64,000 nucleotides of DNA from Hemiscyllium ocellatum (lineage: Eukaryota): assembly GCF_020745735.1 (NCBI RefSeq), contig NC_083417.1, positions 36,084,001 through 36,148,000 of the forward strand. The letters are read 5' to 3'. A program made the position numbers and the translations under genes. How positions within the stretch are numbered: position 1 is the stretch's first letter; the number at the start of each line of letters is the position of its first letter. This document shows positions 12,801-64,000 of this stretch, one piece after another. The notes under the pieces were generated by a model that saw only the letters and a program-made list of their open reading frames with translations, ran no database searches and was not told the origin of the DNA.

Positions 12801-13021
12801 TCGAGTGTGTGGTACTGGAAATGTACAGCAGGTCAGGCAGCATTCGTGGAGCAGGAGAATTGATGTTTCAGGCATAAGCCTTTCATCAGTCCTTCCAGAT
12901 GAAGGGTTTATGCTCGAAACCTCGATTCTCCTGTTCCTCTGATGCTGCCTGACCTGCTGTGCTTGTCCAGTACCACACTCTCAACTCTGATCTCCAATAT
13001 CTACAGTCCTCACTTTGCCAG
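12801..13021. mobile_element. Palindromic PLE pLTR element with two opposed hammerhead motifs (subfamily A)
   Basis: Arms are reverse complements of each other. Minus strand has CTGATGAaaggcttatgcctGAAACatc; plus strand has CaGATGAagggtttatgctcGAAACctc. TSD cttgtcttgtg (12790-12800) / cttgttttgtg (13022-13032). Confidence 0.9.
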
Positions 13022-15651: not shown

Positions 15652-15842
15652 CGGGAGGAAGTGAGGACTGCAGATGCTGGAGATCAGAGTCGAGAGTGTG
15701 GTGCTGGAAAAACATAGCTGGTCAGGCAGCATTCAAGGTGCAAGAGAATCGATGTTTCAGGCACACGCCCCTCATCAGGAATGAGATCAGCCTATTCCTG
15801 ATTAAAGGGCTTATGCTTGAAATGTCGACTCTCCTGCTCCTT
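15652..15842. mobile_element. Palindromic PLE pLTR element with two opposed hammerhead motifs (subfamily A)
   Basis: Full left arm from aagtgaggactgcagatgctggagatc to ctcatcaggaat, a short spacer, then the inverted arm attcctgattaaagggcttatgcttgaaatgtcgactctcctgctcc. Confidence 0.9.
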
Positions 15843-50164: not shown

Positions 50165-51315
50165 TAGAAACAGAAAATAAAAGCAGGAGTAGGCCATTTG
50201 ACCCTTTGAATCTACTTTGCCATTCATCATAGCTGATTATCCAACTCCTATTTCTTTTACTTCATATCCTTTGACTCCTTTAACCTCAATGCTATTTCCA
50301 CCTCTTCATTGAAATAAGAGAATGGTTTAGCCTCAATTACTTTCTATAGCTATGAATTCCACAAGCTAACCACTCTTCGGGTGATGAAATTTCTCCTCAT
50401 TTCAGTCCTAAATAGTTTACTCTGTGACCCCTGATTCTGGACTCCAGGGCCATCAGAAACATCCTCCTTGCAAGTACTATGTCTTATCCTGTTAGAATTT
50501 AATAGATTTCAAAGAGATTCCTCCTAACTCTACTGAAATCCAGCAAATATAATCTTAATGATTTGTCATCTCCTCTTATATCAGTCTTGCCATTCCAGGA
50601 ATCAATCTGGAAAATTATCACTCCACTGTTGCTACATCAAGAATATCCTTCCTCAGACATGGAGACCAAAACTACATACAATATTCCAGATAGGTATCAT
50701 TCAAAGCCCTGTATGTTTGCCATAGGGCATCACTGCACCCGTACTCAAATCCTTTAGCTACGAAGGCCAACTCACATTTGTTTTCTTCATCGCTACTGCA
50801 CCTACATGCTAACCTTCACAAAATGATGTCCAAGGACACCTAAGTCTTATTGTACATTCCCCCCTCTCAGGGGAATAGCTGAATATAGCTATTCAGATAA
50901 TAATTGACCTTCCTGTTTTTGCTACTGAAATGGATAACCTCAGATTTATTCATATTATACTGCGAGGAGAAAGTGAGGTCTGCAGATGCTGGAGATCAGA
51001 GCTGAAAACGTGTTGCTGGAAAAGCGCAGCAGGTCAGGCAGCATCCAACGAACAGGAAATTCGACATTTCGGGCATAAGCCCTTCATCAGGCTTATGCCC
51101 GAAACGTCGAATTTCCTGTTCCTTGCAACACATTTTCAGCTCATATTATACTGCATCAGCCATTTGGCTATTCACTCAACTCATCCAAACCATACTGAAG
51201 CATCTCCGCATCCTCCACACAGCCTGCATCCAATTTTTTTTCATCTGTGAATTTGGATATATTGTGTTTAGTTCCCAAATTCAAATCTTTATTATATGTT
51301 GTGAATAGCTGGGGT
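50165..51315 (-). mobile_element. Decayed CR1 3' fragment with a nested mini-PLE
   Basis: 3' tail agcaggagtaggccatt; atatccttcctcagacatggagaccaaaactacatacaatattccag encodes LEYCM*FWSPCLRKDI on the minus strand. Confidence 0.85.
50964..51140. mobile_element. 177-bp fold-back PLE pLTR element with a perfect 14-bp TSD
   Basis: TSD tcatattatactgc (50950-50963 / 51141-51154). Left arm runs to ccttcatcag; the inverted arm is in two blocks. Confidence 0.93.
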
Positions 51316-58803: not shown

Positions 58804-59661
58804 ACGAAAGTGAGGACTGCAGACGCTGGAGATTAGAGTCGAGAGTGTGGTGCTAGAAAAGCGCAGCAGACCAGGCAGCATCCGAAGGGCAGGAAAATCG
58901 ATGTTTCAGGCAAAAGCCCTTCATCAGGAATGTGACTGGGAGTCTCAGGGGTGGAGAGATTAATGGGAGGGGGGTGGGCCTGGGAGAAGGTAGCTGAGAG
59001 TGCGATAGGTGGATGCAGGTGGGGATAATGGTGATGGGTCAGAGAGGAGGGTGGAGTGGATAGGTGGAAAGGAAGATGGACAGGTAAGACAGGTCATGAG
59101 GGTGGTGCTGAGCTGGAAGGTTGGAACTGGGATAAGATGGGGGAAGGGGAAATGAGCAAATTAGTGAAATCCATATTGATGCCATGGGGTTGGATGGTCC
59201 TGAGGCAGATGATGAGGCATTTTTCCTCCAGGTATCAGGTGGTTCAGGAGTGGCGATGGAGGAGGCCCAGGACCTGCATGTCCTTGGGGGAGTGGGAGGG
59301 GGAGTTGAAGTGTTCGGCCACAGGGTGGTGGGTTGATTGGTGCAGGTGTCCCGGAGATGTTCCCTAAAGTGCTCTGCGAGGAGGTGTTCTGTCTTGTCAG
59401 TGTAGAGGAGACTGCATCAGGAGCAACGGATACAGTAAGTAACATGTGTGGAAATGCAGGTGAAACTTTGATGGATGTGGAAGGTTCCTTTGGAGTTTGG
59501 ATGGAGGTGAAGGGGGAGGTGTGGGCGGAGGTTTTGCAGTTTCTGGGGTGGCAGGGGAAGGTGCCAGGAGGGGAGGGTGAGTTGTTGGGGGGCGTGGCCC
59601 TAACCAGGTAGTCACAGAGGGAACAGTCTTTATGGAACGGGGTTACGGGTAGGCAGGGAAA
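58804..59661 (-). mobile_element. Penelope-like element 3' part (frameshifted GIY-YIG region + pLTR with hammerhead)
   Basis: PPGTFPCHPRNCKTSAHT motif; collinear with 61308-62020. Hammerhead attcCTGATGAagggcttttgcctGAAACATC (about 58896-58931, minus). TSD taaatagacaag (58792-58803) / taagtagacaag (59662-59673). Confidence 0.93.
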
Positions 59662-61404
59662 TAAGTAGACAAGTTTACTGAAGAGATAACAATACAAACA
59701 GGAAAAGGAGAAGTAAGTAACTATCAACAAAAGTAGAGAAATCAAAGGATTTGAGGATGATAATTTGTTTATACTGCTTGATTCAAAGTGATGCCATTAA
59801 CTACAATCCTGATCAATGCTCAGGAATGCAGCTGCAAGTTCAAAGATTAGAAGAAATACAAGCATGCAATACAGAACCATATCAAATCATTAGTGAGGTT
59901 AAATTCCAAATTGTTTAGCCAGCTGGGAATCAGATCATCTATAAGATATTGAAATGCTATTGAGAGATTGACATGCGATTGAAGATTTTGGAGAAGAGTG
60001 ATCAGATTCTCAATGACAATGCTTCTCACAGTGAGCAGCTTCAAGAATCTTTGAACTTGCTGAAAGGTTGCAAGAGAGAAAACTTCAGGGTGGCGATTTT
60101 TTGCTTTGAATTTCTAAGAAACATGAATTATTCAGAATTGTGAAATATTTGGACTTAAAATGCAAAATTAACAAGCCTAGGAAGTTTTTTTGAGGGTTGT
60201 TTCATGTGCATTTCTTACTTTTGGGGAATAATGGGGTGGGGCCAAAAGAATTAGCAGGCTTATTATTGTCTTATTGAATCACATTATGATCATTCCATGG
60301 TCACGGCCATCAAGTCCAGACATGGAACGTGAAGCCAGAAATTTTGGTCCAAAGTTAGGCATGCCAACTCTCCATCACAGCACCCCCAATCAACTCTGAG
60401 TGAAATGAAATATTTAAAGACTGCTTTATTTCCCTAGATTGGTGGATCAATTCCTTCACAAAGGAACAGAATGAATATCAAATTAGGAATAGTAGTGAAA
60501 GTTATTATGATAAGATGATATAAATGAGATATGATCAAATTATCAAATACTCTATAGAACATGATAGTTCAAATGCTGCAGGGATGATTGAAATGTCATC
60601 TGTTGAAAGAAAATGGCCAAGTCTGAAAAATCAAGCTGTGCGTGCGGATAAATATTGTAGTTTTATTCGACTATCTTAGGTGAAGAATACAGTTTGCAAG
60701 AACTTTCCCTCTGGTAATTCAAGAGTGATATGGCAAAATATATATGATCTGCAGAAAACTTAATAGTCTTTTGGTATCCCGTGCTTTCAAATGTTCTTAA
60801 ATAATTAAAGTATAACAATAAAAGGCAAAGAACAACTGTAATACTATTGATCCACACATTCCTAAATAAAATTAACGTGCCATGAAGCTGCATTCTTCAC
60901 TTATTACATACAATTTAGTTAAACTTTATCTAAAATATCATCAACTCAAAGTTTTTTAAAAGATTGCAATGCATTTAATTTTTGCTTAAAGTGTTTATTT
61001 TGGCCCATGAATGCTGATAGCGAATAGAGTTGAAGTTTATTTACTGATTATGCTTGAAAGCATATTTTAATTTAATTTGATAAATAATTTGTGCCTTCAT
61101 TTAATGATTGATTTTCTTGCAATCTGCATGAAAGAGTTGAAAACGTCTCTGCTTTTGAAAAGTATTGACAGACAATGGATGTTTCCTAATTATCAGAAAT
61201 GAGCAAGGTTCTATTCTGCATAACTTAACCCTCCCTTTTATTTCAAAGTTAACAGAATCATTTGCCTAAAGTTCTGTTATGCTACAAATGGCATTTCAAT
61301 GTAGCTTCGAGTAAAAAATGAGGTCTGCAGATGCTGGAGATCACAGCTGCAAATGTGTTGCTGGTCAAAGCACAGCAGGCCAGGCAGCATCTCAGGAATA
61401 GAGA

Positions 61405-61440
61405 ATTCGACGTTTCGAGCATAAGCCCTTCATCAGGAAT
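61405..61440 (-). ncRNA. Minimal type I hammerhead ribozyme, core intact
   Basis: 5'-AUUC CUGAUGA A GGGC UUAU GCUC GAAAC GUC GAAU-3'. Stem I AUUC/GAAU, stem II GGGC/GCUC, minimal stem III with palindromic ACGU. Predicted cut after GUC (between 61409 and 61408). Confidence 0.9.
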
Positions 61441-61573
61441 AAGAGAGAGAGAGCCAAGCAGGCTAAGATAAAAGGTAGGGAGGAGGGACTAGGGGGAGGG
61501 GCGATGGAGGTGGGATAGGTGGAAGGAGGTCAAGGTGAGGGTGATAGGCCGGAGTGGGATGGGGGCGGAGAGG

Positions 61574-62022
61574 TCAGGAAGAGGATTGCAGGTTAGGAGG
61601 GCGGTGCTGAGTTGAGGGAACCGACTGAGACAAGGTGGGGGGAGGGGAAATGAGGAAACTGGAGAAGTCTGAATTCATACCTTGTGGTTGGAGGGTTCCC
61701 AGGCGGAAGATGAGGCGCTCCTCCTCCAGCCGTCGTGTAGTTGTGTTCTGCCGGTGGAGGAGTCCAAGGACCTGCATGTCCTCGGTGGAGTGGAAGGGGG
61801 AGTTAAAGTGTTGAGCCACGGGGTGATTGGGTTGGTTGGTTCGGGCGGCCCGGAGGTGTTCTCTGAAGCGTTCCGTAAGTAAGCGGCCTGTCTCACCAAT
61901 ATAGAGGAGGCCACATCGGGTGCAGCGGATGCAATAGATGATGTGTTTGGAGGTACAGGTGAACTTGTGGCGGATATGGAAGGATCCCTTGGGGCCTTGG
62001 AGGGAAGTGAGTGTGGAGGTGT
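61574..62022 (-). pseudogene. PLE ORF C-terminus: GIY-YIG endonuclease domain (5'-truncated)
   Basis: HIIYCIRCTRCGLLYIGETGRLLTERFREH...VAQHFN...EERLIFRLGTLQPQGMN, with no internal stops. Confidence 0.93.
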
Positions 62023-62316
62023 GTTCTGAAGCGTTCCGCAAGTAAGCGGCCTGTCTCACCAATATAGAGGAGGCCACATCGGGTGCAGCGGATGCAATAG
62101 ATGATGTGTGTGGAGGTACAGGTCTCTGAAGCGTTCCGCAAGTAAGCGGCCTGTCTCACCAATATAGAGGAGGCCACATCGGGTGCAGCGGACTCTGAAG
62201 CGTTCCGCAAGTAAGCGGCCTGTCTCACCAATATAGAGGAGGCCACATCGGGTGCAGCGGACTCTGAAGCGTTCCGCAAGTAAGCGGCCTGTCTCACCAA
62301 TATAGAGGAGGCCACA
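61861..62316. repeat. Five direct repeats with a common start (TCTGAAGCGTTCCG) and decreasing length
   Basis: Units start at 61861, about 62024, 62124, 62193 and 62262, with lengths of about 163, 100, 69, 69 and 54 bp. Confidence 0.97.
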
Positions 62317-62470
62317 ATGTAGCTTGACCATTTTGGAACAAACTAAAAGCATAACCACAACACTAAATTTGTTTATTTAGTGTTTTTCAGCTAAATAGCT
62401 GAGATTGCTATCCAACAAAACAAAAGACAATGCAGGTAGAGAATGGGAGAATGGATGCAAATAAAAATAA

Positions 62471-64000
62471 AGGGCTGAATTTTACCAGAAATCAGCTAGG
62501 CATCAACTTTGGCAAGTTTCGTGGAGGGTTTTCTTAGTGATTCCCAGGGAGTGTTACAGTTTAAAGATACAGGGGAGGCCATTTAGAACTGAAATGAGGG
62601 GACATTTCTTCACCCAGCAAATCGTGAATTCTGTGGAATTCTCTGCCACAGAATGCAGTTGAGGCCAAAACAGTGAATGTTTTCAAGAAAGAATTAGATC
62701 TAGTTCTTAAGACAAAAAGAATCATAAAGCATGGGAGAAATTGGAATCAGGGGATTGAGTTAGATGATCAGCTGTGATCATATTGAATAACAGAGCAGGC
62801 TCAAAGTACCAAATGACCTCCTCCTGCTTATTTGTCCATGTTTTCTCATGTTCTGCTCTGCAAGTTGTTTCATTAGCTATGCACCATGCCTCTGTGGCAC
62901 TCCACACTCTCCAGAGGTAGAGGTAATTGCCATTTATGTGTCCTCCTGCAATTACGGGCACCATTTTTAAATGCTAGTCATGCTGCCATCGAGGAACTTC
63001 CTTTCACTGCGCATGTATGTAATGGGAGAGCAGCAAAAAAAAACCTCTGAGAGCACATAGGTGGCACAGCTGGCATCTCATTCCAAATACAAGAGTGCAT
63101 TCATAAATATATTACTATTCAAGAACAACTCAGCTTGCCCATCTCTTGGATAATCACATCTTACAATCCTGGCTAAGGGAGGGAATGTCTTTTCCCTCCA
63201 TTCCCGATGTATCCCAACAACCTCTCATTGTTCAATGTGTGATCATCACATACAGTGAAGCCTTCAAATAATTGAAATCATTCACTTTTATTTTACAACA
63301 GCAAACACGAAAAAAGAACAATCCAACAAAAGCTGCATTTTCTTCTGGGAAAGTCCAGGGACCACTTGCCTTTTGAGCAGAAACAATTTCACAGTCAACA
63401 GAAGAACACTGCACCCAGCTCACATCCACCAGAAGATGATGCCAATTTAGTCTTGGCTAGCCTGTTGCTCCCAATGTTGCAGCACTCTATCATACTAAAG
63501 GTAATGTCCCTCCTGCTCAATGTCTTCATTTGTCTCTTCAGAACACTGCTTCTGCTGTCTCAGCTCCTCACAGTCCATCATATTTCTTTTTGCCTCCTCC
63601 AACTGTGCAGACCACAGCCTATGAGGATTATGTGACATATTCTGTCTGGAATGTATTGCGAGATCCTCTTCACATCCTGCTCTCCTTTCCAACCCCCAGC
63701 CCCAATCTAATCCACACATTAGAATCTTATCATCAACTGGCCTATCATTCACTTGGCAATTCGCTGGAGGAAGATAAAACTGCATTGTATTGACACTCAG
63801 CCTCACTCAAGGGCATTGTGTTATGGAATTGTCAGCCACTGTTAAGAGGATGGCCTTTGTCTCCTAGTAAATATCTTTATAAAGCTTCCAGCCCTTAAAA
63901 TGAAGCAGGAACAGGCGATTTCTCAAGGATATAGGCATCATGGCAGCTGCCAGGATACAGACTTCTAAGATGTGGTGCCAAGGATCCCAGATGCTTGTAG
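62471..64000 (-). mobile_element. Decayed PIF/Harbinger DNA transposon; transposase remnant about 63520-64000, continuing past the window edge
   Basis: Minus strand across frameshifts reads YPGSCHDAYILEKS...LLGDKGHPL..WLT...EAECQYNA...IGQLMIRF...QYIPDRICHIILIGCGLHS (DDE_Tnp_4-like motifs). Putative terminus gggctgaatttt at 62472. Confidence 0.8.
62556..62850 (+). mobile_element. CR1 3' end nested in the Harbinger remnant
   Basis: catttagaactgaaatgaggggacatttcttcacccag...tggaattctctgccacagaatgcagttgaggcc...gatcagctgtgatcatattgaat. Confidence 0.88.

What the first reader, a model, noticed from the sequence alone, without database searches (positions are those of the whole stretch)
61861..62316. 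Reiterative restart at one fixed template site in a single Penelope insertion (telomerase-like repeat addition or template jumping)
Seen: inside one TSD-bounded PLE insertion, the plus strand (the first-strand cDNA direction for this minus-sense element) copies the GIY-YIG region, stops, and restarts four times at the same site, (c)TCTGAAGCG. The runs end at different points (about 163, 100, 69, 69 and 54 nt). Only the first junction has clear microhomology (ggaggtgt). Copies 2-5 read ttccgCa while copy 1 reads ttccgTa. Known: PLE RTs are the retroelement RTs closest to telomerase, and non-LTR RTs such as R2 can jump to free RNA 3' ends. Inference: a fixed restart with variable stops fits repeated re-priming on a defined RNA position or RNA 3' end during one integration event better than later slippage or unequal crossover, which would give a constant unit.
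Basis: partly seen in the sequence, partly recalled or inferred. Interest (0 to 1): 0.85.

Follow-up and report, generated by a model that had tools for sequence, protein, structure and literature searches.

The report
Nested re-copied segment in Penelope insertion
A young, truncated Penelope-like retrotransposon in a shark genome ends in five shrinking copies of one segment that all restart at the same base, most likely a record of its reverse transcriptase switching template repeatedly during one insertion; it is unusual but so far a single case.

Summary
An 11-bp target duplication bounds a 1,007-bp, 5'-truncated, minus-sense Penelope-like element (61308-62314). On the cDNA-sense (+) strand its GIY-YIG region is copied five times. 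The runs are 163, 100, 69, 69 and about 54 nt. Three restarts are at 61861 and one is one base later.

Three junctions have 0-1 nt of overlap. The 8-nt likeness at the first junction is not flush with the break.

New here:
- The two letters that set copy 1 apart (T at 61876 and T at 61947) are private to it. Copies 2-5 carry the family consensus (98-99% of a roughly million-fold word depth).
- The run lengths never increase.
- The insertion's flank junctions are present in four sequencing runs from two studies.

The B, C and D parts of the long copies, and the short last copy abutting an intact target duplication, cannot come from later tandem duplication. One retrotransposition event with serial, homology-free template switching is therefore the best reading (about 0.7).

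The telomerase-like reading is not supported. The unit is not constant, there is no realignment pairing, no special RNA fold, and no genome-wide pile-up at this site.

Whether the fixed point is an RNA end or an internal site, and whether first- or second-strand synthesis made the array, remains open.

The parts
61297..61307 (.). Left copy of the 11-bp target site duplication CAATGTAGCTT
   Evidence: family D4, 100% identical pair
61308..62314 (-). 5'-truncated Penelope-like element. Sense is on the minus strand, so the plus strand reads as the first-strand cDNA. It is near-identical to the consensus of a very abundant family.
   Evidence: In one search the summed word depth is about 1e6 inside the element against about 40 in the flanks, and only one position inside it departs from the majority letter.
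61404..61441 (-). Hammerhead-like core in the 3' tail region (CUGAUGA ... GAAAC read on the minus strand)
   Evidence: Read directly. No Rfam family reached threshold, so the ribozyme is not confirmed here.
61841..61948 (-). GIY-YIG catalytic motif coding region (residues 26-61 of the 149-aa translation of 61577-62023)
   Evidence: PF01541, 25.3 bits against a cut-off of 22.6. One search gives relatives at 44-69% identity, including a skate protein that carries an RT domain.
61861..62023 (+). Copy 1 (163 nt), continuous with the rest of the element. It carries two private letters, T at 61876 and T at 61947.
   Evidence: In one search the family reads C at 61876 (99.5%) and G at 61947 (98%).
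62024..62123 (+). Copy 2 (100 nt). The donor ends at 62023 with a templated g. One odd t follows, and the template resumes at the equivalent of 61862.
   Evidence: The family's continuation after 62023 comes from the loose ends.
62124..62192 (+). Copy 3 (69 nt). It restarts at the equivalent of 61861, with at most 1 nt of overlap.
62193..62261 (+). Copy 4 (69 nt), identical to copy 3. It restarts at the equivalent of 61861 with no overlap. It may be a separate jump or a later slippage duplicate.
62262..62314 (+). Copy 5 (53-55 nt). It ends against the target duplication with a 2-nt (ca) overlap.
   Evidence: One search shows contigs spanning 62288-62450 in three runs.
62315..62325 (.). Right copy of the target site duplication

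Best explanation
Shown: this is one young retrotransposition event of a Penelope-like element (PLE).

Inferred course of events:
- The target's nicked plus strand primed cDNA synthesis at the element's 3' tail.
- The RT copied about 716 nt, through the GIY-YIG coding region.
- The growing DNA end then left its template and resumed at one and the same position (61861, plus or minus 1) three or four times, without base pairing.
- Each run was no longer than the one before (163, 100, 69, 69, about 54 nt).
- The last run was joined to the other side of the staggered break through a 2-nt overlap.

Inferred basis of the fixed point: it is probably a nucleic-acid end particular to this event, not a special sequence. 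One candidate is a residual or broken piece of template RNA ending in ...CGCUUCAGAG. The enzyme would jump back onto that end after running off or falling off, while the piece's 5' end receded.

The identical fourth unit may instead be a later slippage copy.
For: Anatomy: searches give the copies and junctions. Searches show the GIY-YIG frame on the minus strand, so the plus strand is cDNA sense.

Structural logic, from the sequence itself:
- Units 1 and 2 hold sequence that the short units lack.
- The shortest unit abuts an intact 11-bp target duplication.
- Post-insertion tandem duplication therefore cannot produce the array.

Junctions: J2 has at most 1 nt of overlap, J3 and J4 have none, and J1 has one extra or wrong letter. 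This is the pattern of run-off and end-to-end jumping described for R2-type RTs (PMC2718515, PMC8857657). A purified Penelope-like RT starts synthesis on RNA positions that are not homologous to the primer (PMC11167929).

Chance:
- Two further jumps landing in the same 2-nt window has probability about 8e-6 over the copied 716 nt, or about 1.5e-4 over 163 nt.
- A non-increasing order of the five lengths has a chance of 1 in 60 (own count).

Age: the element matches its family's majority letter everywhere except two positions, so it is young. Copies 2-5 are identical to one another.

Reality of the locus: flank junctions are seen in four runs of two studies. More junction words are held in this species' runs than in other species' runs.

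No pile-up of boundaries at 61861 was among those listed for the rest of the family. This fits an event-specific end better than a site-specific signal.
Against: - This is a single locus, and I could not test other copies of the family for the same pattern.
- Read laying listed no back-joint for this locus's own internal junctions. No run held all 9 sampled junction words. The copy number of the 69-nt unit therefore rests on the assembly.
- Re-using one RNA piece requires unwinding the RNA-cDNA hybrid each time.
- Both private substitutions fall inside copy 1 (chance about 0.026). No model explains this.
- The direction of synthesis cannot be read from the sequence.
Confidence: 0.68

Rival explanations
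1. Site-specific re-initiation. The restart position would be a cryptic initiation or template-alignment site recognised by the telomerase-related RT. The enzyme would re-prime there on intact RNA, as a primitive form of repeat addition.
For: - Purified Penelope-like RT initiates internally at non-homologous sites (PMC11167929).
- The restart is fixed within 1 nt over four junctions.
- The RNA just 3' of the site is rich in A and C (read), as is the published initiation hairpin.
Against: - The site does not resemble the element's own initiation region (score 13 against a shuffle mean of 13.8).
- The RNA fold is ordinary (z -0.37).
- Unit lengths vary and shrink.
- No boundary or back-joint at 61861 was among the best-supported ones at about a million-fold family depth, although other boundaries (61305, 61623, 62023) and other single-copy back-joints were listed.
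Confidence: 0.12
2. Same event, opposite strand. The sense strand, primed from the other target end, would copy the cDNA, stop repeatedly at one fixed point (a template end or block just after ...CGCTTCAGAG), and re-engage further and further upstream until it passed.
For: - The array reads equally well as a fixed stop with growing back-steps of 69, 69, 100 and 163 nt.
- The purified Penelope-like protein cleaves and extends both target strands (PMC11167929).
- A junction with no overlap still requires an RT-like enzyme.
Against: - It needs a block or a discontinuity in the cDNA at one position, and nothing in the sequence suggests one.
- It leaves a heteroduplex that must then be resolved in favour of the longer strand.
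Confidence: 0.12
3. The array arose after insertion, by replication slippage, fork-stalling template switching or unequal exchange at the DNA level.
For: - Copies 3-5 form a perfect 69-nt tandem array of 2.8 units. One unit could well be a slippage copy.
- Constant-unit arrays over the same GIY-YIG motif exist in other Penelope-like copies elsewhere: L001 has 57 bp x 3.1 with a gaa overlap, and L002 has 162 bp x 3.
Against: - Tandem duplication cannot produce units of 163, 100 and 69 nt that share one end, nor put the shortest unit against an intact target duplication.
- It would take several extra rearrangements, one of which must land exactly on the duplication boundary.
- Host polymerases normally need microhomology, which J3 and J4 lack.
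Confidence: 0.04
4. The array was already present in a source element and was copied as part of its RNA. Alternatively, it is an assembly artefact.
For: - The family is extremely abundant, so sub-lineages with odd internal structure could exist.
- The internal junctions were not displayed by the read tool.
Against: - A pre-existing internal array would have to be truncated inside its last unit by chance.
- No high-depth back-joints were seen.
- Other species that share the family hold only the family words, not the extra ones.
- Both flank junctions are confirmed in four runs.
- A 455-nt array inside unique flanks is well within one long read.
Confidence: 0.04

Closest known systems
End-to-end (serial) template jumping by non-LTR retroelement RTs (R2 of Bombyx and Drosophila)
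   Same: Junctions without homology, sometimes with an extra letter. A new template is engaged at a defined end. Several jumps occur in a row (PMC8857657, PMC2718515).
   Different: Here the same short segment is re-copied, with one fixed end and shrinking lengths. It is recorded in a genomic insertion of a Penelope-like element, not of a LINE. The ends of the templates are inferred, not seen.
Internal, homology-independent initiation by a Penelope-like RT (Poseidon of Anolis, PMC11167929)
   Same: The element class is the same. A DNA end is placed on an internal RNA position without base pairing.
   Different: The published sites lie in the element's tail region and define normal 3' ends. This site lies in the GIY-YIG coding region, does not resemble the tail, and no pile-up of family boundaries at it was listed.
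Telomerase repeat addition
   Same: The enzyme lineage is related, and a template stretch is used more than once.
   Different: Telomerase has a fixed template boundary, a constant short unit, and realignment by pairing of the product end. None of these is seen here.
Usual Penelope insertion architectures: partial tandems (pseudo-LTRs), inverted 5'-truncated partners and tails
   Same: 5' truncation, a target duplication, and complex structures made during insertion (PMC8557442, PMC3846280). Fold-back tail copies occur in this same window.
   Different: Those repeats restart at the element's normal 3' end or are inverted. A nested direct array restarting inside the ORF is not among the described forms that I found.
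Rolling-circle reverse transcription in bacterial DRT2 defence (PMC12039810)
   Same: An RT jumps back on the same RNA and makes direct repeats.
   Different: DRT2 has a fixed start and a fixed stop set by RNA structure, makes constant units, and uses a dedicated non-coding RNA.

Membership tests
Penelope-like element (endonuclease-bearing) | C-terminal GIY-YIG endonuclease domain in the element's ORF | tested here: met
   (PF01541 above the curated cut-off). One search gives relatives including a skate protein that also carries an RT domain.
Penelope-like element (endonuclease-bearing) | Telomerase-related RT domain | not testable with these tools
   This copy is truncated before the RT domain. 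Only relatives link the two domains.
Penelope-like element (endonuclease-bearing) | Hammerhead ribozyme motif in the terminal repeat or tail | tested here: inconclusive
   The core boxes CUGAUGA and GAAAC are readable on the minus strand near 61404-61441. No Rfam hammerhead model matched, even at E up to 10.
Penelope-like element (endonuclease-bearing) | Target site duplication and 5' truncation | tested here: met
   11-bp duplication; the ORF is cut at the 5' side.
Telomerase-like repeat addition | Constant repeat unit set by a template boundary | tested here: not met
   The units are 163, 100, 69, 69 and about 54 nt.
Telomerase-like repeat addition | Realignment by pairing of the product 3' end with the start of the template | tested here: not met
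   J3 and J4 have no overlap and J2 at most 1 nt. J1's 8-nt likeness is not flush with the break.
End-to-end template jumping during target-primed reverse transcription | Junctions without homology, with occasional untemplated letters | tested here: met
End-to-end template jumping during target-primed reverse transcription | The donor stop is a template 5' end and the acceptor is a template 3' end | not testable with these tools
   Needs RNA-end mapping or an in vitro reaction.
Post-insertion tandem duplication (slippage or unequal exchange) | Constant unit, and an array derivable from the original insertion | tested here: not met
   The units are nested, and the shortest abuts the target duplication. 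Only the 69-nt pair fits this family.

The most novel reading that the evidence does not exclude
The RT of Penelope-like elements, the closest retroelement relative of telomerase, can hold on to a short piece of RNA and copy it over and over by moving its DNA product back to one fixed template position. This would be a primitive, end-defined form of repeat-addition processivity, preserved here as a genomic footprint and perhaps recurring at other 5' junctions in this genome.
Probability: 0.15. Interest if true: 0.8.

Novelty: new variant of a known kind. Interest (0 to 1): 0.45.

Why it matters
How Penelope-like elements finish an insertion is largely unknown. Their enzyme is the nearest retroelement relative of telomerase.

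A clean in vivo record of three or four homology-free returns to one template position, with shrinking runs, would show that this enzyme can re-use a template segment. It would also give concrete predictions for the published in vitro system.

This genome holds copies of the family at roughly a million-fold word depth, which would allow a statistical test. As a single locus, the finding is a good anecdote rather than a result.

Tried and rejected
- Rfam scans for a hammerhead, with gathering thresholds over the whole window and at E up to 10 locally: no hit.
- RNA folding around the restart site and around the tail: no more stable than shuffles.
- Local alignment of the restart region against the normal initiation region: nothing above shuffles.
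- Laying contigs on a reference with a single copy to catch back-joints to 61861 in other family copies: none listed. The locus's own internal junctions were not listed either, so this absence is weak evidence. Other single-copy back-joints (for example 62023 back to 61953) were listed.
- Junction-word search: only 9 sampled words, giving partial support.
- Exact look-ups of the two array ORFs in public assemblies: not on record.
- Metagenome scan for the restart motif: no match.
- Protein search with the GIY-YIG piece: 84 relatives, none with internal repeats.
- Search with the array ORF: a few other Penelope-like ORFs have tandem GIY-YIG pieces, but with constant units (57 bp and 162 bp). 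These are ordinary tandem duplications. One further case (P0087) had no DNA available.
- Ideas checked by reading the sequence and dropped: (1) a splice acceptor at the site, where the nearest cag lies 2 nt away from the restart; (2) piRNA-guided slicing, where the guide that would cut there starts with C or G rather than U; (3) independent successive insertions, since the units have no tails and no internal target duplications.

Full report
**What is there**

The stretch lies at the right-hand end of a 1,007-bp insertion (61308-62314). A perfect 11-bp target duplication, CAATGTAGCTT, bounds it at 61297-61307 and 62315-62325.

The minus strand carries an open frame whose translation matches the Pfam GIY-YIG catalytic domain above the curated cut-off. 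Its relatives in the public protein collection are fragments of Penelope-like ORFs from cartilaginous fish and other animals, 44-69% identical. One is a skate protein that also carries an RT domain.

The left end of the insertion carries the tail region, with the hammerhead core boxes readable on the minus strand. No Rfam model matched there. Earlier notes of this scan describe the genome as a shark's, with hundreds of Penelope notes.

**The array**

The motif TCTGAAGCGTTCCG.AAGTA occurs five times in the window, all here, against none expected by chance. In register with copy 1 (61861-62023, 163 nt) lie:
- copy 2 (62024-62123, 100 nt)
- copy 3 (62124-62192, 69 nt)
- copy 4 (62193-62261, 69 nt)
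- copy 5 (62262-62314, 53-55 nt)

The last three form 2.8 perfect 69-nt units. No other long-period array exists in the 64 kb.

**Junctions**

The family's own continuation after 62023 is known from the loose ends, so donors and acceptors can be separated.
- J1: the donor runs through 62023, a templated g. One letter t fits neither side. The template then resumes at 61862. The 8-nt ggaggtgt likeness lies just upstream of both sides but is not flush with the break.
- J2: the template resumes at 61861, with at most one shared t.
- J3 and J4: these are identical, resume at 61861, and share nothing.
- J5: the last run is joined to the target through a shared ca.

Two further jumps landing in the same 2-nt window has probability about 8e-6 if any of the 716 copied positions were equally likely, or about 1.5e-4 within 163 nt. 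The run lengths never increase, and one ordering in 60 has that property.

**What the reads add**

Laid contigs show that the family is enormously abundant in the source species. Summed word depth is about one million inside the element against about 40 in the flanks. The family is also present in related species.

Contigs from four runs of two studies run from both flanks into the element, so the insertion is real.

Against this family background, the two letters that distinguish copy 1 are private. At 61876 the family reads C (99.5%) and at 61947 it reads G (98%), exactly as copies 2-5 do. No other position inside the element departs from the majority letter. The insertion is therefore very young, and the C/T difference does not show whether a second RNA was used.

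Both private changes fall inside copy 1 (chance about 0.026). This remains unexplained.

A word search centred on J2 and J3 found 4-6 of 9 sampled words in runs of this species from two studies, against 2-3 in other species. That fits some junction-specific words being present only in this species. No run held all nine, and the read tool did not list the internal junctions as joints.

No boundary or back-joint at 61861 was among the best-supported ones for the rest of the family. The boundaries at 61305 (the optional tail), 61623 and 62023 were listed, as were other single-copy back-joints.

**Why one event**

Write the unit as A (first 54 nt), B (to 69), C (to 100) and D (to 163). The array then reads ABCD-ABC-AB-AB-A, followed by the intact target duplication.
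- An insertion truncated at A could never gain B, C or D by duplication.
- An insertion ending in D would keep D next to the target duplication after any tandem duplication.
- Unequal exchange gives constant units.

Post-insertion processes would thus need several extra rearrangements, one of which must land exactly on the duplication boundary. They can account at most for the second 69-nt unit.

A pre-existing array in a source copy would have to be truncated inside its last unit by chance. Nothing points to many loci sharing these junctions.

Junctions without overlap argue for an enzyme that does not need pairing:
- R2-type RTs run off templates, add odd letters and jump to new template ends (PMC2718515, PMC8857657).
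- A purified Penelope-like protein begins synthesis at RNA positions that are not homologous to the primer, and extends both target strands (PMC11167929).

**What fixes the restart point**

This part is inference.
- The site has no special fold.
- It does not resemble the normal initiation region.
- No sign of use elsewhere in the family appeared in the listed tables.

I therefore favour an end particular to this event: a residual or broken piece of template RNA whose 3' end lay at ...CGCUUCAGAG. It would be re-used by run-off and jump cycles while its 5' end receded, which would explain the non-increasing runs.

Two alternatives remain open:
- The mirror reading is equally compatible with the sequence. 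In it, second-strand synthesis stops at one point and re-engages ever further upstream.
- A true cryptic initiation site remains possible at lower odds.

The telomerase-like reading fails its defining features: a constant unit and realignment by pairing.

**Comparison and novelty**

Described Penelope architectures are partial tandems that restart at the normal 3' end, inverted truncated partners, and tails (PMC8557442, PMC3846280). Fold-back tail copies of that kind sit in this very window.

A search with the array's ORF found other Penelope-like ORFs with tandem GIY-YIG pieces. Where DNA was available they are constant-unit arrays of 57 bp and 162 bp, that is, ordinary tandem duplications.

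A nested direct array with one fixed end at a 5' junction is, as far as I could find, not described. It is best seen as an unusual footprint of a known ability, template switching by a retroelement RT.

If that holds, the behaviour may recur.

**Verdict**

- The single-event, RT-made reading is well supported by structure.
- The telomerase-like and special-site readings are not supported.
- The mechanism of the fixed point is open.
- Interest is moderate until a genome-wide survey is done.

Noticed in passing
window 58807-59660: A second 5'-truncated Penelope-like copy of a different family, 71% identical over 720 nt. It is also minus-sense and has a near-perfect target duplication (AAATAGACAAG / AAGTAGACAAG). 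It has no array at its 5' end, and its frame carries stop codons.
   Followed up: partly
window 50963-51123 (also 12808-13016 and 15659-15828): Short tail-only copies of the hammerhead-bearing Penelope tail, each followed at once by an inverted partial copy (a fold-back). The one at 50963-51123 is flanked by the duplication CATATTATACTGC.
   Followed up: partly
window 61305 (loose ends): In 15-20 contigs per run, other family copies continue leftwards past this element's 3' end with a shared stretch ending ...GTAGGTTAAAAT. This looks like the optional 30-40-nt tail known from Penelope-like elements, that is, two alternative initiation points.
   Followed up: no
window 61876 and 61947: The only two positions where this insertion departs from its family's majority letter both lie in copy 1 of the array (chance about 0.026). 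No model explains this.
   Followed up: partly
L001 3063-3236 and L002 3143-3631: Unrelated Penelope-like copies in public contigs carry constant-unit tandem arrays (57 bp x 3.1 and 162 bp x 3.0) over the GIY-YIG motif. The 57-bp array's boundary falls, within a 3-nt gaa overlap, at the codon homologous to this window's restart site.
   Followed up: partly
window 62540-62840: About 200 bp to the right of the insertion lies another interspersed repeat-like stretch. I did not identify it.
   Followed up: no
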